This document shows, one piece after another, positions 1,546-40,111 of a stretch of DNA of 64,000 nt. Numbering within the stretch: the first letter of the stretch is position 1; every line of letters starts with the position of its first letter. The notes beneath the pieces are model-generated. The model did no database searches, was not told the DNA's origin, and saw only the letters and a program-made list of their open reading frames with translations. The stretch lies in the IMG/VR virus record IMGVR_UViG_3300042541_001760, positions 186,001-250,000 of that record; one strand, given 5' to 3'. The position numbers and the translations under genes are program-made.

Positions 1546-2346
1546 ATGAAATATATTAATTTAAATTCAAAAAAAGGTTTAGTAAATTTATTCGCCGATT
1601 ACATAGTTAAAGAGTTTAGTCACAATACTATGATACAAGTTTCAGATTGTGGGGCATTCTTCTTAGTCAAAGGTAAAACAGATAAAGAAGAGTATGTTGA
1701 TTTAAACGAAATAAAGAAAACATTCTTAAGTGACAATAAAAACAATTATCAATTTTTAGGTTTAGAGAATATTAATATCATTGATATTATTGAGTATGAT
1801 ACTGAAATCCTACCTAAAGATAGATGGCATTCGTTTTATCCCACTGAGAGACCTATATACACTCAATCTGTTATAGATAGACACGAAGACCTGATTAACA
1901 CAATAAACTCGTTAAATGAGGTTAATGGTAGGTCTGTTATTGAATCTGAGGAGGAGGTTATCGGTTTTGATTATTATGAATACCCATCTATGATTATAAC
2001 ATCAGAATTTCCTTATGGTTATGGTTTGGATACAGGTAGATTGGGTTACTACTATTCTGAATATATTGTCAATCATTTGTTTAACATTACCAACTCATCA
2101 AGTATTGATTTTAGATTCTCAAGTCAGGTTGATGATGATATGGAAGTTAAAATAGACATATCTTTATATGATAGTTTATTACCTAACGAATATATTAAAT
2201 CTATGGTGTTGGATGTATTTAATTTTGATGTGTCCGAACTTAAAAATGAATTACAATCTTATGACTTGTTGGATGACTTAAAGGATCCTTTTGGTAAGAA
2301 GCCTTGGTTGGTTAAGGATATGATTGGGGATATTGTTGTTATTTAA
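1546..2346 (+). CDS. Degenerate S-adenosylmethionine synthetase (MetK)-like protein lacking catalytic motifs
   Basis: Segments FFLVKGKTDKEEYVDLNEI, FPYGYG and VLDVFNFD...PFGKKPWLVKD resemble recalled MetK N-, central and C-terminal motifs; GHPDK and GGGAFSGKD absent. Confidence 0.5.
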   Translation: MKYINLNSKKGLVNLFADYIVKEFSHNTMIQVSDCGAFFLVKGKTDKEEYVDLNEIKKTFLSDNKNNYQFLGLENINIIDIIEYDTEILPKDRWHSFYPTERPIYTQSVIDRHEDLINTINSLNEVNGRSVIESEEEVIGFDYYEYPSMIITSEFPYGYGLDTGRLGYYYSEYIVNHLFNITNSSSIDFRFSSQVDDDMEVKIDISLYDSLLPNEYIKSMVLDVFNFDVSELKNELQSYDLLDDLKDPFGKKPWLVKDMIGDIVVI

Positions 2347-2683
2347 ATTTATGATTCCAACGGTGGATATCGTATTTATAAGTCCATAAAGGTGTTACCT
2401 CCTTTAATTTGTAAACCTCATCCAACCATTTTTTTATAGTTGATTGGATATCTCCGTAGTTAAGATGAAATAATAATTCAATTTTCGACCAAATATCGTC
2501 ATTGTGAATATAAACACGCTCAGTTTTCTTATCGTATTCCATTAAAACCTGATTATTATCATTTACATAATATATTGAGTCAGGATAATCCTTATGTTTC
2601 TTTTGTGTTAAATTACCAAAGTGCTTGTTTAACCACTTGATAACAACCCTCTCTAACTGATGTTCATTTACTTGTATGTTCAT
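2339..2683 (-). CDS. Paralog family protein, copy A (MNIQVN-x-QLERVVIKWLN family)
   Basis: Clear similarity to 2694..3038, 3035..3403 and 6750..7061. Confidence 0.85.
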   Translation of the reverse strand: MNIQVNEHQLERVVIKWLNKHFGNLTQKKHKDYPDSIYYVNDNNQVLMEYDKKTERVYIHNDDIWSKIELLFHLNYGDIQSTIKKWLDEVYKLKEVTPLWTYKYDIHRWNHKFK

Positions 2684-2693
2684 ATTCTATTTT

Positions 2694-3038
2694 TCAATTT
2701 CTAAGTTCTTCCCAATTGAAAATGGATGCGTTACTGTTTCTGATTGGTCTCACACCCTTCAATTTGTAAGTATCTTCCAACCAAACCTCAATAATTGATT
2801 TGATGTCATTGTGTCCAATGTGAAATATATTTTCCAAATGTGACCAAATATCACCATAATGAATATAGACATATTCACTTAGTTTAATGTATTGAAGTAT
2901 AACATTATTACTAGAATCCACATAAAATACCACATTAGGAAAATCCTTATGTTTCTTTGGTGTTAAGTTACCTAAGCGTTTGTTTAACCACTTGATGACA
3001 ACTCTCTCCATTTGATTTCTATTTACCTGTACGTTCAT
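2694..3038 (-). CDS. Paralog family protein, copy B
   Basis: Shares N-terminal MN(V/I)QVN..QxERVVIKWLN and C-terminal WLxxxYKLxxV motifs. Confidence 0.85.
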   Translation of the reverse strand: MNVQVNRNQMERVVIKWLNKRLGNLTPKKHKDFPNVVFYVDSSNNVILQYIKLSEYVYIHYGDIWSHLENIFHIGHNDIKSIIEVWLEDTYKLKGVRPIRNSNASIFNWEELRN

Positions 3039-3403
3039 ATTCTATTTTTTAATTTATAGGTCTCCTCCAACCAAATAAGGCCATCCGGCCAATTGAAATC
3101 ATTATCCATTGGTCTTACTCCCTCCAATTTGTATGTCTCTTTCAACCATACCTTCATAATTGAATGAATTACATGATAGTTAAGGTGAAATAACGATTCA
3201 ACTTTTCCCCAAATATGATTATAATCGATATAAAAATTTTCATACTCCGGATTGTATTCCATCATAACCTTATCATTAGAATTTACGTAAAATACTGAGT
3301 CAGGATAATATTTATGTTTCTTTTGCGTTAAATTACCAAAGTGATTGTTTAACCACTTGATAACAACCCTCTCTAACTGATGTTTATTTACTTGTATGTT
3401 CAT
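3035..3403 (-). CDS. Paralog family protein, copy C
   Basis: Same family; WLxETYKL motif present twice; ATGA-coupled to both neighbours. Confidence 0.85.
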   Translation of the reverse strand: MNIQVNKHQLERVVIKWLNNHFGNLTQKKHKYYPDSVFYVNSNDKVMMEYNPEYENFYIDYNHIWGKVESLFHLNYHVIHSIMKVWLKETYKLEGVRPMDNDFNWPDGLIWLEETYKLKNRI

Positions 3404-3996
3404 TTAATTAATAATATTTTACCATAAATATCTTTATACCCACGATTAAACCCCTTATATACTATATGGTATACGTAAACATCTTCCTGACATATTTGAC
3501 CCTTATAAGTTCCATTCCATTGTTTATTAATATCATCACTTTCAAATATTAATTCACCCCATCTATTAAATATTGTAATATTAAACTTATCAACACCGAA
3601 TCCATAAGCCCCGAAAGTTTCGTTTAGATTGTCATCATTTGGTGTAAATGCGTTTGGGACATAGATGCTTAACTCAGGACACCCCTCAACTTTTACAATC
3701 ACTTCGGTTTGTGAGATACAATTACCATTTGTGTATTGAGCAACTATGGTATACTGACCTGGATCATCCCACCTAACAAATAAAGTATTATCGTTTAATC
3801 CTTGTGCGTTCACACTAGGTTCTACTATCCAACGACTTTGATAACCCGGTAATCCATCAACCCAATATTTTTTATCAATATACAATGTATCACATAAATT
3901 TATTATCTGAGGTTCGTTACGTATCTGTGTGTTTAATGAACCACTTAATAATAAAATAAAGACAATTAATATTGTTTTTAAATATGGGTATGACAT
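3400..3996 (-). CDS. Exported protein with Ig/PKD-like domain and T9SS type-B (gliding motility-associated, CHU_C) C-terminal sorting domain
   Basis: Signal peptide ending LNT|Q; C-terminus IYVPNAFTPNDDNLNETF...IFNRWGELIFES...WNGTYKG...VYVY...GKILLIK. Confidence 0.9.
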   Translation of the reverse strand: MSYPYLKTILIVFILLLSGSLNTQIRNEPQIINLCDTLYIDKKYWVDGLPGYQSRWIVEPSVNAQGLNDNTLFVRWDDPGQYTIVAQYTNGNCISQTEVIVKVEGCPELSIYVPNAFTPNDDNLNETFGAYGFGVDKFNITIFNRWGELIFESDDINKQWNGTYKGQICQEDVYVYHIVYKGFNRGYKDIYGKILLIK

Positions 3997-3997
3997 T

Positions 3998-4564
3998 TTA
4001 ATCTGTGTATATAACCGGTGTTGATGGTGGTGGTGTTATCGTTATTGACCCACTACCACTCATAGGGCATCCATTAGCATCTGTTGATGTGAATGTGATT
4101 GGGTAAACTCCTGTCGCTAATCCTGTTGCGTTAAATACCGATCCGGTAACACCAGTTCCGGCAAATACAGGATTAGTCCCAAGTGGATTGGATGTTAAGT
4201 TTATTGTTCCGTTTCCTTGACATAAGGCATCAACTATAACAACAGGTATTGTTGGTGGTAGTACGGTTATCGTTGCCGAACTAGTTGAACTACATAAACC
4301 AATAGTTTTGGTTATGGTAATTGTGTATGTCCCCGCAACAGACCAAGTGACTTGTATTTGGTCACCACTTGATATTGATGTAAATGGAACTGCTGGTACT
4401 ATACTAAAAGTATATGTCGCCAATGGGTCAATAACTTGGTCACCATAAACTTGAACATCGTTCAAACAATAAGTGTTGTTATTTGCCGAATTCGGTGTTG
4501 GTACTTGTCCGTAACCTAATAGGGTTACCAATAAAAATCCAAGAATAATTATAATCTTTTTCAT
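3998..4564 (-). CDS. Exported two-Ig/PKD-like-domain protein
   Basis: Signal peptide GYG|Q; VTWSVAGTYTIT and GTGVTG..F...G.YPITFT.TDANGC motifs typical of Bacteroidota surface proteins. Confidence 0.8.
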   Translation of the reverse strand: MKKIIIILGFLLVTLLGYGQVPTPNSANNNTYCLNDVQVYGDQVIDPLATYTFSIVPAVPFTSISSGDQIQVTWSVAGTYTITITKTIGLCSSTSSATITVLPPTIPVVIVDALCQGNGTINLTSNPLGTNPVFAGTGVTGSVFNATGLATGVYPITFTSTDANGCPMSGSGSITITPPPSTPVIYTD

Positions 4565-4565
4565 A

Positions 4566-5942
4566 TTAATTTGTGTAAACTGATACTGTTATACCACCCG
4601 GTGGTATGTTTATTGTTTTATTTATTGTTGTTGATGTACAAGGTCCGTTAATGGTTAATGAAACATTATAAGTCCCTGATAATAAATATGCGTGAGTTGG
4701 ATTTTGTTGTATTGAAGTTTGACCATCACCAAAATTCCAAAAATACGTATATAAGTTATTCTGATTAACACAATTGTTAGTTATCGTAGGTGACTGAAAT
4801 GATGCGGTGGTGCAACTTATGGTTGGGTTGGGTAATATGTATTGGGGTTGGACATAAAATGACGCAAAGTTAGGTAATCCGAATCTACCTGCCCTACTCA
4901 CAAGTGGTATGGATAAGTCCGAGTAGTTACACCCGACTCCATAAACATTGGGATTATTTATAACGGATAATGATGTATTATTCCTCGCAACATAAACCTT
5001 ACCATCAGGTCCTAATTGAATTGACCCTATGAAAGCGCCTGCGTTTGATACGACTCTACGGCTAGCCTGTATCTGTGCTTGAGTTCCCGCACATAAATCC
5101 CATTGTAATAACATACCTTGGTTTGTCCCACCATATAATATTCTACCGTCAGGCGAGAATTCACATCCATAGATACCCGTCTCGTTTGATAGGGTAAATC
5201 CCCCTGATGCGAAACCTGTGGATGGGTCAAAATTATGTAACTCAATCTTATTCATTCCATAGTGACACGCCGCCAACCTTCTTCCGTTTGGTGATGCCTT
5301 TAATTGTCCATAAGCGGATTGGGGTACTCCTGATACAACAGACCCGGATATTGACCAAGTAGTAATACTAGGGACACCAACATTATCCACCAACCAAGAG
5401 GTAAATACATTTGTATTCCAATCGTGTGATAAGACCCAAACATCAACATTATTACAATGTCTGACGGCACATAACTTTTCACAGGATGGTGTTTTTAGTT
5501 GGGTATTCTTTGTTGTGACCGCACCTAACCCCACACTTAAACTCATATCAACAATTGAGTAACATATACCATTAACTCCAGCATCGTTATCCGAAGTGAA
5601 GATATAATATATGTTGGGTTGATTTGGTTTCTGAACTATGACGGCTGATTGTGTGGATGAAACATCACCGAATAAACCAGTACCATTTGTCATAACCAAA
5701 TGGTTTTTATTCCAAACGGTAATCCCGTTGGTATAGAATAATAGATTACCCAAATTATCTGATATGGTTGCCACCCCTTCAATAGTGGTTAAGGCTCCAT
5801 TGGTTAAAGCAACAGGAGACCCTGAGTTAAAGGTTATCCCCGCATTTGTCCCAAAATACCAATTAGTACTCGGACCGGGTATTTGTGAATATCCGATAAC
5901 ATAAAGTAATGAAAATAATATTATAAGTTTTAACTTTATCAT
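4566..5942 (-). CDS. Exported beta-propeller plus PKD domain protein
   Basis: Signal peptide GYS|Q; NWYFG...EGVATISD..GNLLFYTNG...NGTGL.G..SSTQSA N-terminus; PKD motif YFWNFGDG...NPTHAY..SGTYNVSLT. Confidence 0.85.
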   Translation of the reverse strand: MIKLKLIILFSLLYVIGYSQIPGPSTNWYFGTNAGITFNSGSPVALTNGALTTIEGVATISDNLGNLLFYTNGITVWNKNHLVMTNGTGLFGDVSSTQSAVIVQKPNQPNIYYIFTSDNDAGVNGICYSIVDMSLSVGLGAVTTKNTQLKTPSCEKLCAVRHCNNVDVWVLSHDWNTNVFTSWLVDNVGVPSITTWSISGSVVSGVPQSAYGQLKASPNGRRLAACHYGMNKIELHNFDPSTGFASGGFTLSNETGIYGCEFSPDGRILYGGTNQGMLLQWDLCAGTQAQIQASRRVVSNAGAFIGSIQLGPDGKVYVARNNTSLSVINNPNVYGVGCNYSDLSIPLVSRAGRFGLPNFASFYVQPQYILPNPTISCTTASFQSPTITNNCVNQNNLYTYFWNFGDGQTSIQQNPTHAYLLSGTYNVSLTINGPCTSTTINKTINIPPGGITVSVYTN

Positions 5943-6749: not shown

Positions 6750-7061
6750 CTAATCATAAGTGGCACCAAAAACTTCTTGAACGTCAATATCGTATGTTTC
6801 GTACATCCATTTTGGGACTATAGTTCTAACATCAACATAAGTTAATTTAAACATATTAACCAAACTCATAAGAATATCATTATTCACATGTAAAATACCA
6901 TTATCAGTATTATAATCCATCATCTGTTTATTATTATGGTTAAAATAAAATACCGTATCGGTAAAATATGAAATCTCTTTTAGTGTTAAGTTACCGTAGT
7001 GTTTATTTAACCACTTGATAACTACTCTTTCCAATTGATGTTTATTTACTTGTATGTCCAT
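6750..7061 (-). CDS. Paralog family protein, copy D
   Basis: MDIQVNKHQLERVVIKWLNKHYGNLT N-terminus. Confidence 0.85.
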   Translation of the reverse strand: MDIQVNKHQLERVVIKWLNKHYGNLTLKEISYFTDTVFYFNHNNKQMMDYNTDNGILHVNNDILMSLVNMFKLTYVDVRTIVPKWMYETYDIDVQEVFGATYD

Positions 7062-18053: not shown

Positions 18054-19352
18054 TTACTGTGTTTTTCTATTGTAATTCAGTAAGTTACTCATTTTATTTA
18101 TTTCTTCGTTCAACAACTTAGTTTTCTTATCTTGTGTTGACTCTAATTGATTCATAATCTTATTAGCCTTTGTGTTACTTTTATTAGTAGTGTTTGTCTC
18201 TCCTTTAGTAACTTCACCAGCCTCATCAGTAACGACCGGTTGGGGTGATTTATTATAGGCTTGTTTTTTAAGTGCCCCCAATAAATTATCCTTTCTGATT
18301 TTATTTCTGTTTTTATTAACAGGTGTCTCAACCGCATTTGCCCACTTAGGATTATTACCAGTTCTAGATGAACCTTCAATATTGTCTGTTACCCAATCTT
18401 CATTCGGGTGAATTTCATCATACATTAAGTTCTCTTGACCTGCGGATGAAAATGCTTCAACATATTCCTCAACTGCGTCAGATGCTTGGTATGTCTTTTT
18501 TGCCATCTTTTTATCCATTTGTCCGTTAGATTCAGGGAAATGTTCTGCATCCATAGTATAATCTTCTTTAGAACCATTTTTAAGGTAGTCCTTCATCTTT
18601 TGAGTTACAGATTTAATGTAATCATCATTTTCTTTTTTAGATTTACCAATTGCCGTTTCGTATGTTGCCAATCCTTTAGGTTTTGACATTTTTTTAATAT
18701 TGTCTTTCTCCTCTTTAACAATCTTTTCAATCATATCAATCATCTCATCTTCGGTTAATTTGATAGATTCTTTAACTTGATATTCTTTACCATCAACTTC
18801 AAAGTCATCATCTCCTTTACGTTTTGCTTTTGCTAATGCTCCTGTAAACGCATTACCTTCTTCCATTTCTTCGTCAGTTTGATGTTTTTTTGACTTTCTT
18901 AACATTTTAAAATCTTCAGCGTCAATTTTGTTATTTTTATTCTTATCCATTTTTTTCTGTCCACCGAATAATGCTTCAGTCATTTCAGCACCAGCATATC
19001 TTTTGTGACTCTCACAAGCCTGTGCGTCATAATCTTCACCATCTTCATTACAAACTCTTGATAATTTTTCAGAGGGGTCGAAATCCATATCGGTACTTTC
19101 CATCATGCCACCATATCCACATTCGTTACATTGACCTTCATTCATAGTTCCACCACATTGTTCACAAGTTTCTCCTTCTTCCATCTCTTCATCCATTGAT
19201 ATTTCTTGCCATTCATCCTCTGTCGTCATATCATCATCAATTTCATTGACTTTGGATTTGATTTTATTTACTAGTGATTCGGCTCTTTCTTCTAATGACT
19301 CCTTTAATGTTTTTTTAACAATTGAATCAATATAGTTATTTACGTTTTTCAT
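18054..19352 (-). CDS. Acidic putative prohead core/internal head protein
   Basis: Very E/D/K/M-rich; CxxC-CxxC segment; EF-hand-like DKNKNNKIDAED; many hydrophobic-x-E-(G/S/A) sites; own late-type promoter. Confidence 0.5.
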   Translation of the reverse strand: MKNVNNYIDSIVKKTLKESLEERAESLVNKIKSKVNEIDDDMTTEDEWQEISMDEEMEEGETCEQCGGTMNEGQCNECGYGGMMESTDMDFDPSEKLSRVCNEDGEDYDAQACESHKRYAGAEMTEALFGGQKKMDKNKNNKIDAEDFKMLRKSKKHQTDEEMEEGNAFTGALAKAKRKGDDDFEVDGKEYQVKESIKLTEDEMIDMIEKIVKEEKDNIKKMSKPKGLATYETAIGKSKKENDDYIKSVTQKMKDYLKNGSKEDYTMDAEHFPESNGQMDKKMAKKTYQASDAVEEYVEAFSSAGQENLMYDEIHPNEDWVTDNIEGSSRTGNNPKWANAVETPVNKNRNKIRKDNLLGALKKQAYNKSPQPVVTDEAGEVTKGETNTTNKSNTKANKIMNQLESTQDKKTKLLNEEINKMSNLLNYNRKTQ

Positions 19353-23665: not shown

Positions 23666-24466
23666 TTACATATATTCAAAAAGAACCGAACTTTCATTTC
23701 GTAATTTACGAAGAGCCTTCTCTTTAATCTGTCTCACACGTTCTTTAGTAAGATTGAAGTCGTCACCGATGTCCTCCAAAGTTCTTGGTGTCCCCGTTAG
23801 ACCGAAATAATCCTCAATGATGGATCTCTCTCTTTTGTCCAAAATACCTAACACATCCATAAGTTTTTCTTTCAACTTATCTTTGGTATCAAAACCATCG
23901 TCAGGCATTACACAATTCTCATTTACGATTACATCAATAAGTGTATCTCCGTCTTCATTAATCTCGTCGTTAAGATTGACCATTGAAGGTAGTGAGGTGA
24001 ACTTATCGGACAATTGCTTGCCATTGTTCTCAACCTCTTTTTTAGCTCGTTGTAGGTCTTGTACGACATTAACAGGGAGTCGTATGGTTCTTGCGTTCTC
24101 GTTAAGAGATTGGAGAATACATTGACGAACCCACCATACCGCATATGATATAAATCGTAGGTTCTTATTCCAATCAAAATTCTCAATGGCTTTAATCAAT
24201 CCCATATTACCTTCGGCAATTAAATCGGGGAATGGTAATCCTTGATTCTGATATTGTTTTGCCACGGTAATAACAAAACGTAAATTACCTTCAACTAACT
24301 CCTGATGTATCTCATCTTTCTGTCTATCTGTTAGGTTTCCTGTGGCCATCATAGCAGCCAACTCACGTTCTCTATCAGGTGTCATAACCTTAATCTTTCT
24401 TAGATCTTTAAGATAAGATTGAATCTCGTCTTGGTTGATCGGTATTCCTGTGTTTTTCTCTCTCAT
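23666..24466 (-). CDS. rpoD: Sigma-70 family RNA polymerase sigma factor, Bacteroidota primary-sigma type (no region 1.1)
   Basis: NLRFVITVAKQY, DLIAEGNMGLIKA, FISYAVWWVRQ, TIRLP, TLEDIG...LTKERVRQIKEKALRKLR. Confidence 0.93.
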   Translation of the reverse strand: MREKNTGIPINQDEIQSYLKDLRKIKVMTPDRERELAAMMATGNLTDRQKDEIHQELVEGNLRFVITVAKQYQNQGLPFPDLIAEGNMGLIKAIENFDWNKNLRFISYAVWWVRQCILQSLNENARTIRLPVNVVQDLQRAKKEVENNGKQLSDKFTSLPSMVNLNDEINEDGDTLIDVIVNENCVMPDDGFDTKDKLKEKLMDVLGILDKRERSIIEDYFGLTGTPRTLEDIGDDFNLTKERVRQIKEKALRKLRNESSVLFEYM

Positions 24467-24470
24467 ATGA

Positions 24471-24986
24471 TTATTTTGAATATTGGTGTAAGGTTTGTTT
24501 TTCTTTTTTGGTTAATGACTCAATTCCTTTATTACTTATCTTCTCTAATATTTCATCCAAAGATAACACTTTTTCGGGAATAATGGTCTCTTGATAATCA
24601 TCGTTTGTTAAACTTAATACTTCGTTAATGGTATCATAATCTTGTTGTAACTCAGGGTTAACATTATTATAATTATCCAGAAATCCGATTCCGTCATCCT
24701 CTAAGTCAAAAAGATGTTCAAAAATTTGTGTTGGCATCTGACAAGATATCTCACCCTCGTACGGCACCAACATATATATGATACATTCGTTTGATACGAC
24801 AGAGTGGATAAATTGTTTTAATTTAAAGAAATCTTCATTGGATTTGAAGTGGAATATACTACTACTCTCACCATAACTAAATTTTACGTTTTTAGAGTCG
24901 GAGACATCGACAATTTTCTTAGCCATTCTCTCAACACCTGATTCATCGTTTTTAACTTGACCGAATATAGATAATAGATATTTCAT
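24471..24986 (-). CDS. Hypothetical protein with C-terminal DUF6576-like motif
   Basis: LDEILEKISNKGIESLTKKEKQTL terminus. Confidence 0.65.
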   Translation of the reverse strand: MKYLLSIFGQVKNDESGVERMAKKIVDVSDSKNVKFSYGESSSIFHFKSNEDFFKLKQFIHSVVSNECIIYMLVPYEGEISCQMPTQIFEHLFDLEDDGIGFLDNYNNVNPELQQDYDTINEVLSLTNDDYQETIIPEKVLSLDEILEKISNKGIESLTKKEKQTLHQYSK

Positions 24987-25003
24987 AGTTATTTATTATT
25001 TTA

Positions 25004-25011
25004 CAAATGTA
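25004..25011 (-). promoter_or_regulatory. Bacteroidota-type promoter TACATTTG (upstream of the 24986/sigma operon)
   Basis: TAnnTTTG match 17 nt upstream of ATG 24986. Confidence 0.6.
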
Positions 25012-25041
25012 ATGATATTTATCGTGATAAACAAACTTATT

Positions 25042-25683
25042 ATGAATAAAAGAATATCAATTACAAGAGACCAACTGGTTGAACATATTAGAAAATCAAT
25101 TTCTAAAAATTTAATGGAACAGGACTATTCGTCCGATATAAATAGACCAACTCAACCTAGAGAAAAAGGGGTTAAGACAATATTTGGTGATAAGTATTCA
25201 AGATATATTCCAAATGATGTTATTCGTTATATGAGAAAGAACCCGGCTCTTATATTTGAAAGGTTATTTGAACTATATGGTGAGGACGCCTATATGTATT
25301 TAGATAAAGCAAAAGAAAAGATGGGTGATTCACCTGAACCTATGATGGAACAAGATATGGATGATGATTACGATGATGAAGATGAGGAAGAAGAACAGGA
25401 TCCATTGATGGACACATTAAAAGATGTTGTTAACAACAATGGTGAATTCAGTGAAAGTGACATTGATGACATTAATGATTATGGGGGTTCTAAAAGATCG
25501 TTTAGAGGTTCAATTTATTTAGATGGAATGGTACCCGAAACTGACGATAAAGAATTTGATAGAAAAGTGGCAATTAAAATTATGGAGTTCTTCGCATCAG
25601 GACTGAACATTAACAGATATGTCGGTGGTGTTGGTTTCAAACAACGAAGTATGACAAACCCATTTGATAACGAGAATTTTTAA
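25042..25683 (+). CDS. Acidic hypothetical protein with N-terminal leader (ORF track start 25012)
   Basis: TATTTATC at 25016 favours ATG 25042; leader ends NLMEQ. Confidence 0.75.
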   Translation: MNKRISITRDQLVEHIRKSISKNLMEQDYSSDINRPTQPREKGVKTIFGDKYSRYIPNDVIRYMRKNPALIFERLFELYGEDAYMYLDKAKEKMGDSPEPMMEQDMDDDYDDEDEEEEQDPLMDTLKDVVNNNGEFSESDIDDINDYGGSKRSFRGSIYLDGMVPETDDKEFDRKVAIKIMEFFASGLNINRYVGGVGFKQRSMTNPFDNENF

Positions 25684-25690
25684 AATATAA

Positions 25691-25717
25691 GCCCCACCCT
25701 AAGAGTGGGGTTTTTTT
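25691..25717 (+). terminator. Intrinsic terminator
   Basis: GCCCCAC-loop-GTGGGG followed by T7. Confidence 0.8.
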
Positions 25718-25733
25718 ATATCATTATTTTTCG

Positions 25734-25741
25734 TATATTTG
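25734..25741 (+). promoter_or_regulatory. Bacteroidota-type promoter TATATTTG
   Basis: TAnnTTTG match between the terminator and ATG 25778. Confidence 0.65.
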
Positions 25742-25777
25742 TAAAATTAAATTAGTGTTAACCTTTTAAAATATAAA

Positions 25778-26395
25778 ATGAAAAACATATTATTTTTAGA
25801 TGAACAAATTAAAAGAATCTACGAAGTGTCATATACTATTTCGGAATCAAGAGGTAAGAATAGACAGAACATTATTAATGATGTGGTAATAGAATCCTTA
25901 AAATCCGATATATACTATAATGATTGTGTGTTTAAAAAAGAAGTTATAATCCCCGGAACAAAATTACTATGGGGTAAATACTTTCCTGTTGATATATGCG
26001 TATATAAAGATAATACTCTAATTGAGATTATTTTAAATAAGGCGCCTTCATCAAATATAAAGCAAAATAGAATTAATTCACTTAATGGTATTAATTCAGA
26101 CATAACAAGATTATCTAAATTAGAAAATATAAAAATTTCTTTAATTAATTTTTTACCTAAGATATCCCCTTTCTTTAAAAGAGATGAAAGTATTAAATCT
26201 TTTGAGAAAAATGAGCCTTTTTTCTTATCTACTTCTGGCGCCTTTTATAAATTCGATGTTGATGAAATATATGTTACTTTTGAAATTAATAATTTATATA
26301 AATGTAATTCAAAAGTTGATGTTAGAAATTTATTTTTGGTGAATCCTATAAAAAATGTGAATTTAATTCAAAAAAATTATAAAAGTTTAACTTAA
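25778..26395 (+). CDS. Putative type II restriction endonuclease
   Basis: Adjacent to and convergent with an MTase; PVD...E...K.P.SN.KQN..N segment; shares the very AT-rich composition of the MTase. Confidence 0.45.
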   Translation: MKNILFLDEQIKRIYEVSYTISESRGKNRQNIINDVVIESLKSDIYYNDCVFKKEVIIPGTKLLWGKYFPVDICVYKDNTLIEIILNKAPSSNIKQNRINSLNGINSDITRLSKLENIKISLINFLPKISPFFKRDESIKSFEKNEPFFLSTSGAFYKFDVDEIYVTFEINNLYKCNSKVDVRNLFLVNPIKNVNLIQKNYKSLT

Positions 26396-27840
26396 TAAGT
26401 ATAACTCTTTATAGTTGTGGTGGATACACTCAACCAAACATCATCAGATTTACTTTTATCTGATAAAATTTTATTATTTAACTCACAAAAACTATGGAAA
26501 TTACCACTTGAGATTATTTTAACGAACTCTTCTTTCATTCCTTTTTTAATATCGATTAACAATCCAGACATAACTAGACAATTTTCTTTTTCGGGTATTT
26601 CAATATAATGTATGTTTCTTGATCTTAGGAATGTTAATGGTAGTATTATGTAATCACCTTTTTTTTCTTTTAGTAATCCTTGCCTTCTACCGTAAGCATA
26701 CCAAGTATCATAATTTGACGTTTTTCCTTTATCTCTTGATAATAAATCATTTTTTCTACTTAAAAGATAATCATAACAAAATGGATAATCTCGTTTAAGG
26801 TTATTTTCATTTATTATTTCACCATTTACGTAAGGATATATGATGTATTTATACTCGCTAAAATTTCTACTTGTGGTTGCTTTTATATATTTTTTACAAA
26901 TGTTTTTTTCTATTTTAAAACCATTCTTATAACAAAAATCCTCGTCATTATAATCCATTTTAAAAACATCGTCCTTTATTGTTGCCAATCCACCAGAATA
27001 ATAATTAACCATATCACTTAGTTTATTGTTACCGTATTTTATTTCCTCAAATATCCATTTGTTAAGAGATAAATCTTTTTTGTTTTTAATAATATTTAAT
27101 TTATTTGTTTCATATAAAACAACATCAGAAATATTTTCTTCACATATAACTATTGATGTGTAGGTTGATATATTATCCCATACTTTTTCATTCTTAAAAT
27201 CATAAATATATGATACTCGTTCTTTTATTATTTCTCTTATAAAAGACCCTGATTTATTTTTTATAAAAGAATTTGGTATAATAAAACCTACTTTTTTTGA
27301 ATGTATTAATGATTTTTCCAAAAAAGCATAATATAAATCAATATTACCTAATGAAATTGATTTTAACTCTCCTTTTAACGAATTTAAATAATCTTTGTTT
27401 ATATTTTGAATTCGGACATATGGTGGATTTCCAAGTATAACATCATAATCCATTTTCTGTATTAGAAAATCACCTTGTATAATATTATTAAATGATAATT
27501 CACCATCATGTTTAAAATATTCAAAATACCCATTTAATAGTAATTTAAATTCATTAAGAAAATCTTTATTTATATCATAACAGAATAAATTATTATTTAC
27601 AAAATTGGCAATTTCCTTTATAGAATAATCTTTTTGTCTGAAAAACTCTAATAGTGAAAAAACGAAAACTCCTTTACCGACACTTGGCTCACAGATAATT
27701 TCATTTATTTTTGGATTAATTCTATTAATAATAATATCACATATGGTTTTGTCTGTGAAAACAACACCATTTTCTTTAATGGATTTTTTATCTTTCTGAT
27801 TAAAGTAACTTGAATTACTTATTATTTTGTCTAAATTCAT
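26392..27840 (-). CDS. Eco57I/TaqI-like N6-adenine DNA methyltransferase
   Basis: GVVFT, EPSVGKGVF (motif I), GNPPYVR (motif IV), DLYYAFLE, GFIIPNS. Confidence 0.9.
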   Translation of the reverse strand: MNLDKIISNSSYFNQKDKKSIKENGVVFTDKTICDIIINRINPKINEIICEPSVGKGVFVFSLLEFFRQKDYSIKEIANFVNNNLFCYDINKDFLNEFKLLLNGYFEYFKHDGELSFNNIIQGDFLIQKMDYDVILGNPPYVRIQNINKDYLNSLKGELKSISLGNIDLYYAFLEKSLIHSKKVGFIIPNSFIKNKSGSFIREIIKERVSYIYDFKNEKVWDNISTYTSIVICEENISDVVLYETNKLNIIKNKKDLSLNKWIFEEIKYGNNKLSDMVNYYSGGLATIKDDVFKMDYNDEDFCYKNGFKIEKNICKKYIKATTSRNFSEYKYIIYPYVNGEIINENNLKRDYPFCYDYLLSRKNDLLSRDKGKTSNYDTWYAYGRRQGLLKEKKGDYIILPLTFLRSRNIHYIEIPEKENCLVMSGLLIDIKKGMKEEFVKIISSGNFHSFCELNNKILSDKSKSDDVWLSVSTTTIKSYTY

Positions 27841-27854
27841 AGATTATTTATTTT

Positions 27855-27862
27855 TATAAATA
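27855..27862 (-). promoter_or_regulatory. Putative late promoter TATTTATA
   Basis: Exact motif 14 nt upstream of MTase ATG. Confidence 0.5.
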
Positions 27863-27878
27863 TTAGTTTAAACCACTA

Positions 27879-30293
27879 TTATTGAGTAATCCTACTAATA
27901 TTATTTTCTTTTGTGATTCTTATTACGTTGTCCGCCCAATTAGTGATTAGAGGATTGTGAGTTATGACGAATATCTTCTCAAAATAATCCTTAATCTTAA
28001 CGAAGAATTCATATACCATATCTAAGTTGTCATTGGATATTTTACCGAACACCTCATCCATAACATTTATATTAGGTTTTGGTAATGAACATACCTTACT
28101 TAATACCGATCTTAATGCTAGTGAAGCAATCGTCTTTTCATACCCACTACCTGATGACATCAACTTCTCTACCTGAGTATCGTTATCAATCATAATAAAC
28201 TCAACTTCATTCTTATCGTTGATTCTGACTTCAAGTTTGAACTGACAACTATCTTCCAATAATCTTTGTAACTCAGAATTAATAATTGGTATCATTGTTT
28301 TCATAATCAACTTTGATATACCGTTCTTACCATAGACCTCCAAATAAAGTTTATAATACTTTTCTCTTTCTGACTCTTCGGATATCTTTTGAATAAGTGT
28401 CATATTTTCCACAATCTTATTATTAAGAGTTTGAGTTTGATATGTTAGATTCGTTATCTCCCTATCTATCTTATTCTCTTCCATATTAAGTTCGTCCATA
28501 CGGATGTTCGCCTTAATTATCTGACTTTCAATTTTAAGGTTCTGTTCAATCTTGGTTTGAATTTGATTATACCGGTTTAACTTGTCCTTAATCGCATCAA
28601 TTTTAAGATTATTACTTTCAATATTAACCTCGTATTTCTCTTTGATTAACTTGTTTTTCTCGTATTCATTAAACTCTTTCTTAAGTTGAACGAAACCCTT
28701 CTCTTTGCCCGATAAATCAAGCATTAACTCGGTTATTTGACCATAATGCTGGTTATATGAGGCAAGTTCCCCCAATTTTGTCTTGGTAATTTCCGCATTT
28801 AATAACTCAATTCCGCAGTGTTCACACTTGATTCCACCCGATACAGATTTCGCCAACTCATTAAGGTTTGCGATTTTGGTTTCCGTTTCAATCTTCTTAA
28901 CAAGTTGTTCGTTATACTCTTCCTTTACCTTGTCGTGTTTGTCCTCGTGATAAAATGAGGATGGTTCAACAACATTAATCTTGGATAGGTCTTCAATTAA
29001 CTTTTTATTGGTATAGTCAATCTGTGTGATGTCCTCGTTAAGTTTGGTTGGATTAAGGATGGCAATTGCGTTGTCAATGTCATTATGTTTCTGAGAAACT
29101 AATCCATCTCTATAGTCCTGACCCTTCTTAATTCTTCCCTTAACATCCTCCAATTGTTCTTGGTGTTTTATTAGGGTTTCATTGTTTTCGGTAATCTTTG
29201 TCTTGGCCGATTCAATATCCTGTTTCAATTGTTCGGTGTTATAAACATTGGACAACATAGATTTTGAATATTTACTATACAAATCTTTACCTATCTCCTC
29301 TTTTTTCTTTAGAGATTCCAAACCAAGAAACCTTGATAATACCTGACCCCTTGCGGTTGGTTTGGCGTCAATTAAATCCTCCAAATTAGATCCTGTGGTT
29401 AGAATGGTTGTTAAGAAGTCGTCCATCTCACCGATTGATGTTTTGATAAACTTTTCTGTCTCAACTCTTTGTTCCCCCGTGAAATTCTGTAAACTTCCGT
29501 CGGACAACTTTTTAAAGAAGTCCAACGTAGTTTTTACATTCCATTCACCGGCTTTTGACATTTTTCTCTCAATGGTTCTGATAATCAAATAGTTATCACC
29601 ATCAATCATAATATCACCACGAACTGACACCTTGTTCTTATCTGTAAATCTATTAAAGATTTCTTCTGCCTTTTGCGTCTTTGTTGTCGTGTTAAAGAAT
29701 AGGAATAGTAATAAGTCAACGGTAAGGACGGTCTTACCCCCAAAATTAGGTGGATTTGATTCTACAACGGTAATACCATTACATAAGTCAAAATCAATCA
29801 CCTGATCCTCACCATACGATAAGAAATTGGAGAACTCTATCTTTTTAACAAACCACTTCTTAAATGGTGTTACTTCGGACTGGTCTAATACCAATTCATT
29901 CTCAACTTGGGCATCAATTCTCAATACCTCCGGTAGATAATCCTCTGCCGATTTTGAGATTAGAAAGTTCTTCATCAACTCCTGTTGATAATTTTTATCC
30001 AAGATGTTAAACGATATGTCAACCGATTGAGTCGTATCCTCCGATGTCTTAACCTTAGTTATAACATTAACATTATTTGAAGCGTATTTTTTTTGGAAGT
30101 ATTGTTTTACACTTTTGATTTTCTCTTGTGTGAAATTCTCAGGTGCATCTTCCCACACCACTTTGACGTAGGGATTCTCCAATTCGGATATATCCAAATT
30201 ATGTTTCATGTTTTCGTAATTAAAGTTCTTGGGCGGATTGAATAAGTCCAGTGTCTTCCGTGTCACCAGATGGTGTTGTTTTGAGTTCCTCAA
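27879..30293 (-). CDS. sbcC: SbcC/Rad50/gp46-like recombination ATPase (probable start 30209)
   Basis: IEFSNFLSYG, GGKT Walker A, coiled coil with CEHC hook, MSSGSGYE signature, VMDEVF Walker B, VITHN. Confidence 0.9.
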   Translation of the reverse strand: MRNSKQHHLVTRKTLDLFNPPKNFNYENMKHNLDISELENPYVKVVWEDAPENFTQEKIKSVKQYFQKKYASNNVNVITKVKTSEDTTQSVDISFNILDKNYQQELMKNFLISKSAEDYLPEVLRIDAQVENELVLDQSEVTPFKKWFVKKIEFSNFLSYGEDQVIDFDLCNGITVVESNPPNFGGKTVLTVDLLLFLFFNTTTKTQKAEEIFNRFTDKNKVSVRGDIMIDGDNYLIIRTIERKMSKAGEWNVKTTLDFFKKLSDGSLQNFTGEQRVETEKFIKTSIGEMDDFLTTILTTGSNLEDLIDAKPTARGQVLSRFLGLESLKKKEEIGKDLYSKYSKSMLSNVYNTEQLKQDIESAKTKITENNETLIKHQEQLEDVKGRIKKGQDYRDGLVSQKHNDIDNAIAILNPTKLNEDITQIDYTNKKLIEDLSKINVVEPSSFYHEDKHDKVKEEYNEQLVKKIETETKIANLNELAKSVSGGIKCEHCGIELLNAEITKTKLGELASYNQHYGQITELMLDLSGKEKGFVQLKKEFNEYEKNKLIKEKYEVNIESNNLKIDAIKDKLNRYNQIQTKIEQNLKIESQIIKANIRMDELNMEENKIDREITNLTYQTQTLNNKIVENMTLIQKISEESEREKYYKLYLEVYGKNGISKLIMKTMIPIINSELQRLLEDSCQFKLEVRINDKNEVEFIMIDNDTQVEKLMSSGSGYEKTIASLALRSVLSKVCSLPKPNINVMDEVFGKISNDNLDMVYEFFVKIKDYFEKIFVITHNPLITNWADNVIRITKENNISRITQ

Positions 30294-37834: not shown

Positions 37835-40111
37835 TTATATATCAAGCTTAACCAAGAATTGTTGTATACTCTGTCTTTCTATGGGTGATTGTAACTTAGC
37901 AATAGCCATTAGGTCTCTAACATTGTCATATAAAGCCACTTCACTTATATATGATGGTACTCCTGCCGTCCAAGTCGGATTTGATGGGTAATTAAACTCG
38001 TTTTGATTTAGATTACACAACCATCTCATTTCATATATGGTCGCCTGTATTTCTGTTTCAATATTACCGTAGAAGTAATACTCATCTCCGAAGTTAAGGG
38101 TTTGTCCTGTTTGTCCAACTGTGGGTAATGTCACGTAATTATTTAAGTTATATGTAAGTGCCAAATCGTAATCGGACTTTGTGATATACAATGTGGTTCC
38201 TGTAATACCGCTAGTCGTGATTTTACCTCCAACTATGGTTGCCGATAATTGATTTGTTACATCTATTTTTTTCCATCCTGTCGGGCTTGGTTTTCCTTCT
38301 CCACTTACTTTCTGACATAGTATTTCAAAAGAATCATAAGTAAAATTACCAAGACACCCAAACTCATTTCCGAATGTAATTGCGATATCTTGACTAGTGC
38401 TATTACAAGTTTGATTAGGACCCAATATTGATGAATAATAATTACAATGTAATGAATTAGTATAGAAAAGGCTATTTGAGAATCTATATGTCACATACAT
38501 ATAATCAGTATTTCCCGTTAATACACCTTCTCCGTTTGGAGTTGATAGCACTAATCTCGGTGCCGGTAATGTCCAATTTCTGTTGGACTTATATGACATT
38601 GCCGCGATTATTTCCTCATCGTCAATAACTATCGTATTTAAATCGGGAAACACTTTACCTATTCTACTTGGGTATCCGTCAATTACGTTCGCATTTGTAT
38701 CCCAAAGATGATAATATCTATGACCCGGATTGTTCATATCCGTATTTTTATTTGAGGTTAGATAATGTTCTTGGAACAGTCCTAATGTTTCAAATTCTAC
38801 GTTTGGTGGGTCAACATAAAATGTTTGTCCTTGGCAACAGTCTGCTGATTTATGCCATTGTAACCAAGGTATTGTGAATCTGAAATTTCTTGCCATACCA
38901 ACCGTATTGGTTTCATTCAAAGGGTCATATGGTTGTAACGCAAATTTTTCACCATAAACAAAGTCAATGGTGTTATTAGTATAATGAACAATCGCTATTG
39001 CCTTTTGGTCTTTACCCGGTACAATGATTTTATCACCAAGAGAATTATAATAGTTAACAGAATCACTATCTGTTTGACCATTACTATTACTATATCCAAA
39101 GTATTCTTTACTACCCAAATAATTTACAGATCCAAAATTAGTATAATCCTTATAAGCAGAACCATTTAAACCTGCCGGTGATTCTGACCAAGGAATATTC
39201 ATATTCCATATATTAACATTAAATAAATCAACATCACATACAGATTCAAAATTAAAAACATCTTGATTCCAATGTGGTTCTGGCGTAGCACTGTCGTAGA
39301 AGTTAGTCATACCTGATGGGTACACCAAAACTCTCGCCTCACCTGTTACCGATGGGGTTGCATAGTTAGGAACATTTCTATCCACAGTGATTATATTACC
39401 ATTAACCCCAATAATTCTATATGTTAAAATTGGCGTACAACTTTGAAATGACATAAAACAAGATCTATCGCTTGGGGGTACTGGAGGGCATGGATTATAC
39501 GGTGAATAAACGGTTGTACATGGTGATGAAACCGAAGTATAAGTACAATTACAATTAGTTAATCCTAACCCATCATAATATATTGTAACAAAATCCCCTG
39601 CGGAAAATGAATATGTTGTTGCGGTATTACAAATACTCGGAACCGGAATTAAGGTCATAGTATTTTGACTAGGGCCTAAATTATTCATATCCACATAGTA
39701 ATTACCTGTCTTAACATATTCACTACCTGTTTTAGCACTCCAATTTGTAGGTAATGTGGTTGTGTCAGCACTAAAAAATCCTCTCATTGGGGCTACATTA
39801 TATACATTTGAAACTATAGAATCCATAAATGGTATTCCGTAAGTTGCTCCTGATAACGTATCAACATAATAAGGGTACTTAACATTTTGAAAATTGGCTT
39901 GGGGTACAGGCGCTCCATTTTGTGAATTAAAAGCGGGTTCTAACACAACACTATTTGTTTGATTAAAACCACTTATCGCGTTGTATGAAACCTCACTATC
40001 TCCAACTTGGAAATAAGTTATGTTAAAATTACCTTGTGATATTTTTTGTCTACCAATATCAGTAATTCTTGTATTAACTAAACCTGATGTATTTTTTAAT
40101 ATATAAGCCAT
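37835..40111 (-). CDS. Baseplate/tail-collar-type structural protein
   Basis: N-terminal TRITDIGRQKI..G...ITYFQVGDSE; C-terminal ISEVALYD...LMAIAKL..PI pattern of tail-collar/fibre-attachment proteins. Confidence 0.65.
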   Translation of the reverse strand: MAYILKNTSGLVNTRITDIGRQKISQGNFNITYFQVGDSEVSYNAISGFNQTNSVVLEPAFNSQNGAPVPQANFQNVKYPYYVDTLSGATYGIPFMDSIVSNVYNVAPMRGFFSADTTTLPTNWSAKTGSEYVKTGNYYVDMNNLGPSQNTMTLIPVPSICNTATTYSFSAGDFVTIYYDGLGLTNCNCTYTSVSSPCTTVYSPYNPCPPVPPSDRSCFMSFQSCTPILTYRIIGVNGNIITVDRNVPNYATPSVTGEARVLVYPSGMTNFYDSATPEPHWNQDVFNFESVCDVDLFNVNIWNMNIPWSESPAGLNGSAYKDYTNFGSVNYLGSKEYFGYSNSNGQTDSDSVNYYNSLGDKIIVPGKDQKAIAIVHYTNNTIDFVYGEKFALQPYDPLNETNTVGMARNFRFTIPWLQWHKSADCCQGQTFYVDPPNVEFETLGLFQEHYLTSNKNTDMNNPGHRYYHLWDTNANVIDGYPSRIGKVFPDLNTIVIDDEEIIAAMSYKSNRNWTLPAPRLVLSTPNGEGVLTGNTDYMYVTYRFSNSLFYTNSLHCNYYSSILGPNQTCNSTSQDIAITFGNEFGCLGNFTYDSFEILCQKVSGEGKPSPTGWKKIDVTNQLSATIVGGKITTSGITGTTLYITKSDYDLALTYNLNNYVTLPTVGQTGQTLNFGDEYYFYGNIETEIQATIYEMRWLCNLNQNEFNYPSNPTWTAGVPSYISEVALYDNVRDLMAIAKLQSPIERQSIQQFLVKLDI

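What the first reader, a model, noticed from the sequence alone, without database searches (positions are those of the whole stretch)
25734..27862. Convergent putative R-M pair with apparently inverted timing
Seen: a putative endonuclease (+) and an Eco57I/TaqI-like MTase (-) overlap tail to tail in a block visibly more AT-rich than its surroundings. The nuclease follows a host-type (early) promoter and the MTase follows the late-type motif. Established: cellular R-M systems express the MTase first. Inference: an early nuclease could attack host or competitor DNA while late methylation marks progeny genomes. The nuclease also has a leader-like N-terminus.
Basis: partly seen in the sequence, partly recalled or inferred. 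Interest (0 to 1): 0.6.

Follow-up and report, generated by a model that had tools for sequence, protein, structure and literature searches.

The report
Phage-borne restriction-modification cassette in hotspot
A lytic, T4-like freshwater phage carries a horizontally acquired two-gene restriction-modification cassette (an uncharacterised nuclease family plus an adenine methylase) at a site where many related phages carry other such systems; the supposed "nuclease first, methylase late" timing is only partly borne out.

Summary
ORF 25778-26395 (+, 205 aa) and ORF 26392-27840 (-, 482 aa) converge and share a 4-nt TTAA stop overlap, in the lowest-GC 2-kb stretch of the 261-kb phage genome.

- **Methylase:** a gamma-class N6-adenine DNA methyltransferase (Pfam Eco57I, PADLOC MTase_II, motifs VGKG and NPPY).
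- **Nuclease:** no Pfam, NCBIfam or PADLOC hit. A confident model (pLDDT 91) has the PD-(D/E)xK restriction-endonuclease fold. Family-wide conserved residues are E55, D72, K88, N97, N100 and D/E108, and a symmetric homodimer is predicted. Its relatives sit beside methylases of two unrelated families in three gene orders.
- **Insertion:** the roughly 2.16-kb block lies exactly between the sbcC stop codon and a bidirectional terminator. Among 64 related phages this junction is empty in 26 and holds at least 1 kb of cargo in 30. At least 21 of those cargoes include a DNA methylase, and several are other R-M pairs.
- **N-terminus:** it is not leader-like.

Verdict: a real Type II R-M pair, a new member of a known kind. 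The recognition site, enzyme activity and transcription timing are untested.

The parts
25689..25713 (.). Bidirectional intrinsic terminator. It ends the 223-aa gene (25012-25683, +). On the minus strand it is the first terminator after sbcC and M. It marks the left border of the inserted block.
   Evidence: The terminator scan finds it on both strands. It aligns with the terminator that directly follows the sbcC stop in relative L036.
25734..25741 (+). TATATTTG, a host-type (Bacteroidota TAnnTTTG) -7 promoter box 44 nt before the R start. There is no TTG -33 element; that region is the T-tract of the terminator.
   Evidence: Sequence. The motif lies upstream of 37 of 344 ORFs against 11 in the control. 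A TAnnTTTG box is also found before R in L002, L003/L005 and L007.
25778..26395 (+). R: a 205-aa predicted Type II restriction endonuclease of an unnamed PD-(D/E)xK family. Candidate catalytic residues are E55, D72 and K88. N97, N100 and D108 are conserved on the helix that forms the predicted dimer interface.
26392..26395 (.). TTAA: the overlapping stop codons of R and M. The same 4-nt overlap occurs in L002 and L003-L005.
26392..27840 (-). M: a 482-aa gamma-class N6-adenine DNA methyltransferase of the Eco57I family. Motif I (VGKG) lies at about residues 54-57 and motif IV (NPPY) at 138-141. The C-terminal half is the presumed target-recognition domain.
27855..27863 (-). ATATTTATA, the genome's late-type promoter motif, 22 nt before the M start.
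27879..30209 (-). Context: the sbcC/Rad50-like gene, last ancestral gene of the PD-(D/E)xK-nuclease/sbcD/sbcC operon (33203 down to 27879). Its stop codon is the right border of the insertion, and read-through from it enters M.
25714..27878 (.). The inserted accessory block of about 2.16 kb (both promoters, R and M). It is low in GC and differs by only 0.5-0.8% between two lake strains whose flanks differ by 3.6-4.5%.

Best explanation
The block is a complete, horizontally acquired Type II restriction-modification cassette carried by a virulent T4-like myovirus of freshwater Bacteroidota.

Shown:
- M is an Eco57I-family N6-adenine DNA methyltransferase.
- R is a small PD-(D/E)xK endonuclease of an uncharacterised family, and it is predicted to form a homodimer.
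- The pair was inserted between the sbcC stop codon and the operon's bidirectional terminator. In this phage clade that junction is a hotspot for interchangeable R-M and methylase cargo.

Inferred mechanism:
- The infecting genome arrives already methylated from the previous cycle.
- R is made at a low level from a host-type promoter that lacks a -33 element. It cuts unmethylated DNA, meaning the host chromosome and any co-infecting phage that lacks the mark.
- M is made both by read-through of the sbcCD operon (early or middle) and from its own late-type promoter. Replicating and packaged phage DNA therefore stays protected.
- The genes converge with no terminator between them. Strong late transcription of M runs antisense across the whole of R to the terminator at 25689-25713, and should dampen R late in infection.
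For: **M identity.** Pfam Eco57I 6e-19, PADLOC MTase_II 1.5e-56 over residues 14-454, NPPY present.

**R fold.**
- AlphaFold model with pLDDT 91.4 and pTM 0.88.
- Nearly all the best PDB matches are PD-(D/E)xK nucleases, including BstEII, NgoMIV, AgeI, BglII and Cfr10I. They are individually weak: Foldseek best E 4.6e-3, VIA Z up to 7.8.
- ESM Atlas: TM 0.78/0.84 to a viral cluster named 'Restriction endonuclease'. TM 0.75 to part of a 694-aa Eco57I-methylase protein cluster, a fusion of the two activities.
- BFVD: E 6e-14, TM 0.71/0.77 to 'Restriction endonuclease' of Synechococcus phage S-CAM7.
- In 71 divergent members, K88 and N97 are invariant, D72 and N100 occur in 70 of 71, E55 in 66 of 71, and D/E108 in 71 of 71.
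- 7 of 71 members hit Pfam HSDR_N_2.

**R dimer.** ipSAE 0.70 against a best control of 0.00. That mark was reached by 20 of 30 proteins solved as pairs of one chain and by 1 of 23 solved as single chains. Runs agree in at least 97% of contacts, and pLDDT is 91.

**Linkage to methylases.** R relatives sit next to one in every fuller context examined:
- convergent with an Eco57I type (window, L002, L003-5, L007, L029);
- R then M (L006, L012);
- M then R (L011);
- R then an N6_N4_Mtase (L009/L010).

**Insertion and hotspot.**

**Recent exchange.** The cassette diverges by 0.5-0.8% against 3.6-4.5% for the flanks in run X3.

**Promoter classes.**

**Lifestyle.** Gp23, gp20 portal and terminase are present and no integrase was found.
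Against: - No enzymatic, methylome or transcript evidence exists. No public RNA run holds this phage.
- The individual PDB structure matches fall in a range that a common fold arrangement can reach by chance.
- The canonical acidic residue of the (D/E)xK triad is absent. Position 86 is Leu, and E83 is conserved only in the close subfamily.
- D/E108, which might substitute for it, lies on the helix predicted to form the dimer interface. Its conservation may therefore be structural rather than catalytic.
- Solitary R homologues with intact residues occur in cyanophages S-CAM7 and S-WAM1, and in fragments L027 and L028. The family does not strictly need an adjacent methylase.
- The recognition sequence is unknown.
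- The promoter assignments rest on motif and gene-class association, not on mapped transcription starts.
Confidence: 0.72

Rival explanations
1. Strict inverted timing. R is early and M is made only late, so for much of the infection only the nuclease is present. Phage DNA survives because it entered methylated.
For: R has a host-type box and M a late-type box, each at a typical distance from its start. Late-motif genes include the portal gene and the capsid operon. In chloroviruses the nucleases act within 5 min and the methylases are not packaged (PMC7019647).
Against: M is 38 nt downstream of sbcC with no terminator, and the cassette was inserted upstream of that operon's terminator. After two rounds of replication without M, phage DNA would be unmethylated on both strands and cleavable. 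In L003 the M gene has a host-type box, and in L089 and L049 the cargo sits behind the early TATCTTTG promoter.
Confidence: 0.15
2. A selfish hitch-hiker. The cassette is a mobile addiction module that spreads among co-infecting phages by recombination at the hotspot and gives the phage no benefit.
For: It is the lowest-GC segment of the genome. It is absent from all 80 related loci at this junction. It is nearly identical between strains whose flanks differ by about 4%, and the cargo is interchangeable.
Against: The phage-type promoter wiring, and the persistence of the same cassette in lake metagenomes from 18 studies, suggest it is maintained. At least 21 of 30 occupied hotspots carry methylase cargo, which suggests selection for this function. 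Selfish spread and usefulness do not exclude each other.
Confidence: 0.3
3. M is the useful gene, protecting the phage from a host restriction enzyme of the same specificity. R is a decaying or non-restriction nuclease, for example a homing-type or repair nuclease.
For: Orphan methylases are common in phages (PMC4176335). This genome has two further N6_N4 methylase genes. M has many more relatives than R. The R-like gene next to the M homologue of a 735-kb phage has Met in place of K88. Solitary R homologues exist in cyanophages.
Against: R is full length, all family-invariant residues are intact, and it has its own conserved promoter box. It keeps 59-82% identity in 20 near-full-length relatives. 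Its family co-occurs with two unrelated methylase families, as expected of a cognate nuclease.
Confidence: 0.12

Closest known systems
Orthodox Type II (IIP-like) R-M systems with convergent genes, such as the AhdI and Esp1396I architecture (PMC5333194)
   Same: Separate small nuclease and methylase genes, tail to tail. The nuclease has a PD-(D/E)xK fold and a predicted homodimer. The methylase has its own promoter.
   Different: There is no controller (C) protein gene. The genes overlap at their stop codons with no terminator between them. The cassette is carried by a virulent phage and wired to phage-specific promoter classes. The nuclease family has no Pfam, NCBIfam or PADLOC model, and the recognition site is unknown.
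Chlorovirus R-M pairs such as those of PBCV-1 (PMC7019647)
   Same: Virus-encoded, adjacent nuclease and methylase genes. The viral genome is methylated, and the nuclease is thought to degrade host DNA early. The atlas's nearest clusters by sequence features to R are mostly from Nucleocytoviricota.
   Different: Chlorovirus nucleases are packaged in virions. Here R sits behind a host-type promoter, and packaging is unknown. The host is a bacterium, probably of Bacteroidota, not an alga.
Restriction endonuclease-like proteins of T4-like cyanophages: S-CAM7 gp111 (UniProt A0A1D8KTP6), S-WAM1 gp185 and ACG-2014f
   Same: Same protein family. Structure match E 6e-14, TM 0.71/0.77. E55, D72, K88, N97, N100 and E108 are all kept.
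   Different: The cyanophage genes are solitary, lying among small hypothetical genes with no methylase within 2.5 kb. They share only about 19-22% identity with the window's R.
Eco57I-family methyltransferases and Type IIG fused enzymes
   Same: The M catalytic domain matches PF07669 and PADLOC REase_MTase_IIG models over the methylase part. A 694-aa bacterial cluster fuses an R-like fold to an Eco57I methylase.
   Different: Here the two activities are separate proteins, and M (482 aa) has no nuclease domain.

Membership tests
Type II restriction-modification system (separate R and M) | A DNA methyltransferase with an AdoMet-binding motif and a catalytic (D/N)PP(Y/F) motif | tested here: met
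   VGKG and NPPY are present. Pfam Eco57I 69 bits (cut-off 25.3), N6_Mtase 22.8 bits (cut-off 20.4), PADLOC MTase_II 1.5e-56.
Type II restriction-modification system (separate R and M) | An adjacent gene for an endonuclease with a known nuclease fold | tested here: met
   The model has pLDDT 91. The best matches are PD-(D/E)xK nucleases and Type II enzymes. TM 0.78/0.84 to a 'Restriction endonuclease' cluster, and BFVD E 6e-14.
Type II restriction-modification system (separate R and M) | A canonical catalytic constellation D...(D/E)xK | tested here: inconclusive
   E55, D72 and K88 are conserved family-wide. Position 86 is Leu, and E83 is conserved only in the close subfamily. D/E108 is invariant but lies on the predicted dimer helix. 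The active-site geometry could not be inspected.
Type II restriction-modification system (separate R and M) | The nuclease family co-occurs with methylases across genomes and gene orders | tested here: met
   A methylase is adjacent in nine distinct contexts, in three gene orders and from two methylase families. Exceptions are cyanophages and two short fragments.
Type II restriction-modification system (separate R and M) | Site-specific cleavage that is blocked by the cognate methylation | not testable with these tools
   This needs enzyme assays or methylome data.
Type IIP homodimeric enzymes | A symmetric homodimer | tested here: met
   Prediction only. ipSAE 0.70 against a best control of 0.00. 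That mark was reached by 20 of 30 solved pairs of one chain and by 1 of 23 single chains. Contact agreement is at least 97% and pLDDT is 91.
C-protein-controlled R-M systems | A small helix-turn-helix controller gene upstream of R | tested here: not met
   No ORF lies between the terminator (25713) and the R start (25778), nor elsewhere in the 2.16-kb block.
TaqI-like methyltransferase | A TaqI-type C-terminal specificity domain, or similarity to M.TaqI | tested here: not met
   No such Pfam hit at E up to 0.1. The only PDB chain at E up to 0.01 is a Type I M subunit.
XhoI restriction endonuclease family (PF04555) | A match to the family profile | tested here: not met
   R has no Pfam hit. There is only a fold-level resemblance, TM 0.61/0.63, to an XhoI-domain cluster, plus a language-model lead.
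   The sequence reads MKNILFLDEQ. Homologues are polar there, and the region is part of the folded domain. No dedicated signal-peptide predictor was available.

The most novel reading that the evidence does not exclude
A whole clade of virulent freshwater T4-like phages keeps a dedicated hotspot just after the sbcCD recombination-nuclease operon, where interchangeable Type II R-M systems are swapped by recombination. The phages use them offensively: an early nuclease destroys the host chromosome and unmarked co-infecting phages, while the phage's own genome arrives pre-methylated. The window's cassette would be one allele of this 'weapon slot', with convergent transcription serving as a built-in late switch from R to M.
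Probability: 0.3. Interest if true: 0.75.

Novelty: new member of a known kind. Interest (0 to 1): 0.55.

Why it matters
Complete R-M systems are reported as nearly absent from virulent phages: 9 in 831 genomes (PMC4176335). Here a lytic phage lineage found in lake metagenomes from 18 studies carries one. Its relatives carry other R-M pairs, or methylases alone, at the same junction.

This gives three things:
- an uncharacterised restriction-endonuclease family to test, possibly with a new specificity;
- a natural system for asking what R-M systems do for a virus, whether host DNA degradation, exclusion of competing phages, or selfish spread;
- a case where the usual 'methylase first' rule may not apply, because the element's own DNA enters already methylated.

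Tried and rejected
**Searches that gave nothing**
- Megablast of 25000-28000, and tblastn of R, against 50,697 phage records: no match.
- GTDB species genomes scanned with R patterns: no relative.
- Sequence search of R, and of its 71-member profile, against PDB chains: only chance-level hits.
- Pfam, NCBIfam and PADLOC on R: nothing. PHROGs gave only an unnamed family.
- RNA evidence: no RNA run holds the stretch, so timing could not be tested.

**Ideas dropped or left open**
- E83 as the catalytic acid: dropped, because it is not conserved outside the close subfamily.
- D/E108 as a 'migrated' acid in the manner of Cfr10I and NgoMIV: left open, because that helix is the predicted dimer interface.
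- Inferring the recognition site from word avoidance: inconclusive. CATG, GATC, TCGA and TGCA are strongly depleted, as is ACAGC/GCTGT. A phage that methylates its own sites need not avoid them, so none of these can be assigned to this pair.

**Other results**
- The small genes beside methylases in related hotspots are not members of the R family (hhalign probability below 1%). Several do match other PADLOC REase_II models.
- A 3.6-kb 'skip' joint (24280 to 27910) in one X3 contig has only 32 letters on its shorter side and was laid at 85% likeness. I did not treat it as a deletion variant.

- No alternative genetic code was used.
Full report
**1. What is there**

The window is bases 186001-250000 of a 261,052-bp IMG/VR virus record, estimated 89% complete.

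- ORF R runs 25778-26395 on the plus strand (205 aa). ORF M runs 26392-27840 on the minus strand (482 aa). They converge, and their stop codons overlap in the palindrome TTAA at 26392-26395.
- The pair has 23.3% GC, against 33.1% for the rest of the window and 32.4% for the genome. It is the lowest-GC 2-kb window in the whole genome.

**2. The methylase**

- M matches Pfam Eco57I (6e-19) and N6_Mtase. It matches a PADLOC Type II methyltransferase model over residues 14-454 (1.5e-56).
- It carries VGKG, followed later by NPPY. That order is the gamma-class arrangement of N6-adenine methylases.
- Nothing supports 'TaqI-like' specifically.
- More than 120 relatives at 40-79% identity exist in metagenomes. 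One, at 52%, lies in a 735-kb uncultured phage.

**3. The nuclease**

R has no Pfam, NCBIfam or PADLOC match, and only an unnamed PHROG.

*Fold*
- With 20 relatives as the alignment, AlphaFold gives a confident model: pLDDT 91.4, pTM 0.88. It has a helix / three strands / helix / strand core.
- Against the PDB no single match is strong. The best Foldseek E-value is 4.6e-3 (BstEII), and the best VIA Z is 7.8.
- Even so, the lists consist almost wholly of PD-(D/E)xK nucleases. They include many Type II enzymes: BstEII, NgoMIV, AgeI, PspGI, BglII, Cfr10I, Bse634I, SgrAI and HindIII.
- Predicted-structure libraries give clear matches:
  - TM 0.78/0.84 over 180 residues to a viral cluster named 'Restriction endonuclease';
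  - TM 0.75 to part of a 694-aa Eco57I-methylase cluster, which is a natural fusion of the two activities;
  - TM 0.61 to an XhoI-domain cluster (all);
  - E 6e-14 to 'Restriction endonuclease' of Synechococcus phage S-CAM7.

*Conserved residues*
- A profile search of 1.8 billion representatives found 95 relatives.
- In an alignment of 71 of them, K88 and N97 are invariant. D72 and N100 occur in 70 of 71, E55 in 66 of 71, and D/E108 in all 71.
- Seven members reach the Pfam HSDR_N_2 nuclease domain.
- The textbook acidic residue two positions before the lysine is missing, so the exact catalytic constellation is unresolved.

*Dimer and N-terminus*
- A symmetric homodimer is predicted. The score is 0.70 against a best control of 0.00, a mark reached by 20 of 30 solved one-chain pairs and by 1 of 23 single chains. 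Contact agreement is at least 97% and pLDDT is 91.
- The interface comprises residues 64-66, 98-113 and 148-158.
- The N-terminus is not a signal peptide.

**4. Genetic linkage**

R relatives lie next to a DNA methylase in every fuller context examined:
- convergent with the same 4-nt overlap but different neighbours, in a 102-kb contig (L002) and in L003-L005;
- convergent in L007, and in the 735-kb phage (L029). There the R-like gene has lost K88;
- R then M in L006 and L012;
- M then R in L011;
- R followed by a methylase of another family (N6_N4_Mtase) in L009/L010.

Changing partner, order and orientation while keeping adjacency is the signature of a restriction enzyme family.

There are exceptions. 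Homologues with intact residues stand alone in the cultured cyanophages S-CAM7, S-WAM1 and ACG-2014f. Two short IMG/VR fragments also lack a nearby methylase.

**5. Origin: an insertion in a hotspot**

*The phage*
- It has a T4-type portal, a Gp23 capsid protein and a terminase. No integrase was found.
- Its nearest isolates by portal protein are Microcystis phage Mel-JY01 and the Flavobacterium 'immuto' phages.
- Promoter boxes of the Bacteroidota type point to a Bacteroidota host.

*The junction in relatives*
- I fetched 80 related loci through the sbcC-like gene, at 60-76% identity.
- The common arrangement is sbcC, about 70 nt, then DUF6576 and a sigma-70-family gene.
- None of the 80 loci has this R.
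- In the closest relative with a simple junction (L036), the sbcC stop is followed at once by a bidirectional terminator and the end of the 223-aa gene.
- In the window, the roughly 2.16-kb R-M block lies exactly between that stop codon (27879-27881) and that terminator (25689-25713).

*Tally of the junction*

| State of the junction in 64 loci with both anchors | Loci |
|---|---|
| Empty (under 150 nt) | 26 |
| 150-1000 nt | 8 |
| At least 1 kb of cargo | 30 |
| ...of which carry a DNA methylase-like gene | at least 21 |

*Cargo identified at this junction*
- REase_II PDLC03550 plus an N6_N4 methylase (L035, L047).
- REase_II PDLC03414 plus an Eco57I-type methylase (L089).
- REase_II PDLC03424 plus an N6_N4 methylase (L052).
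- Proteins of about 800 aa with an Eco57I domain (L049, L071, L099).
- A Dam-type methylase (L112).

*Spread in nature*
- The cassette itself occurs in lake and freshwater metagenomes from 18 studies.
- In one run its contigs differ from the window by 0.5-0.8%, while the flanks differ by 3.6-4.5%. That is consistent with recent exchange between strains.

**6. Timing**

*Two promoter classes stand out*

| Motif | Upstream of ORFs (of 344) | In-gene control | Genes it precedes |
|---|---|---|---|
| [AG]TATTTAT[AT], 7-45 nt before the start | 91 | 4 | Portal, the operon with the major capsid gene, virion lysin-domain proteins: a late class |
| TAnnTTTG (the Bacteroidota -7 box; PMC2483708, PMC6847099) | 37 | 11 | Primase, the DUF6576-sigma operon, another methylase: an early class |

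- R has TATATTTG 44 nt upstream but no -33 TTG. Relatives keep such a box before R.
- M has ATATTTATA 22 nt upstream.

*Why strictly late methylation is unlikely*
- M begins 38 nt after sbcC with no terminator between, and the insertion lies upstream of the operon's own terminator.
- Transcripts of the PD-(D/E)xK-nuclease/sbcD/sbcC operon should therefore continue through M, and then antisense across R.
- In relatives, M can have a host-type box (L003), or the whole R-M pair sits behind the early TATCTTTG promoter (L089, L049).
- 'Nuclease early, methylase only late' is therefore unlikely. 'Both early, methylase boosted late, nuclease damped late by convergent transcription' fits the anatomy better. 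All of this is inference.

*Why early R is not paradoxical for a virus*
- The infecting genome is already methylated, and the host chromosome is expendable.
- Chloroviruses, whose packaged nucleases degrade host DNA within 5 min, are the precedent (PMC7019647).

**7. Verdict**

This is a real Type II R-M pair and a new member of a known kind. Its nuclease family is uncharacterised. It sits in a clade-wide hotspot for R-M cargo in virulent phages, where such systems are reported to be rare (PMC4176335). The recognition site, enzyme activity and transcription timing remain to be measured.

Noticed in passing
Whole genome G000; the four sites are at genome positions 96166, 145920, 150606 and 237219 (the last is window 51219): The non-palindromic 5-mer ACAGC/GCTGT occurs 4 times against about 237 expected from base composition (ratio 0.017). 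It is by far the most avoided 5-mer. This suggests a host Type IIS, IIG or III restriction site, or some other strongly counter-selected signal.
   Followed up: partly
Whole genome G000: Four-base palindromes are strongly depleted against a Markov expectation: CATG 0.24, GATC 0.36, TCGA 0.34, TGCA 0.47 and CGCG 0.30. This looks like classic restriction avoidance, even though the phage carries at least three DNA methylase genes.
   Followed up: partly
Related loci L035-L114, the junction after the sbcC-like gene (window equivalent 25714-27878): This is a hotspot for accessory cargo in a clade of freshwater T4-like phages. At least 21 of 30 occupied sites hold DNA methylases. Several are other Type II R-M pairs or proteins of about 800 aa with an Eco57I domain.
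   Followed up: yes
window 23666-24986 (-): A phage-encoded sigma-70-family factor (regions 1.2, 2 and 4) follows a DUF6576 gene behind a host-type TACATTTG box. The pair is conserved next to sbcC in about 60 related phages. It is a candidate driver of later transcription.
   Followed up: partly
Genome-wide; for example window 27855-27863, 18054-19352 and 37835-40111 upstream regions: A late-type promoter motif [AG]TATTTAT[AT] lies upstream of 91 of 344 ORFs. Its spacing from the start codon is bimodal, about 11-13 nt and 20-26 nt. It resembles the T4 late box TATAAATA but is not identical to it.
   Followed up: partly
G000 180734-181651 (-) and 155768-156340 (-), outside the window: Two further N6_N4-type DNA methyltransferase genes. 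The first sits behind a host-type TAnnTTTG box. No partner nuclease was looked for.
   Followed up: no
G000 156415-158486, 176930-177624, 188339-189403, 192750-193061 and 256765-258146 (window 2339-3403 and 6750-7061 among them): A 16-member paralogous family of proteins of about 100-120 aa lies in tandem clusters, many of them preceded by the late-type motif. Function is unknown.
   Followed up: no
L029 (LR756501.1, 735-kb uncultured phage) 2489-4669: An M homologue (52% identity) converges on a 231-aa distant R-family gene (hhalign probability 93.8%) in which the invariant Lys88 aligns with Met. This may be a decayed nuclease beside a retained methylase.
   Followed up: partly
L007 740-2190: The Eco57I-type methylase next to a 38%-identical R homologue matches in two frames (residues 2-393 and 390-482). 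This is either a frameshifted gene or an assembly error.
   Followed up: no
window 25012-25683 (+): A 223-aa, very acidic protein of unknown function sits behind a late-type motif. It is present only in the closest relatives (L035, L036, L106), so it is also accessory cargo at this hotspot.
   Followed up: partly
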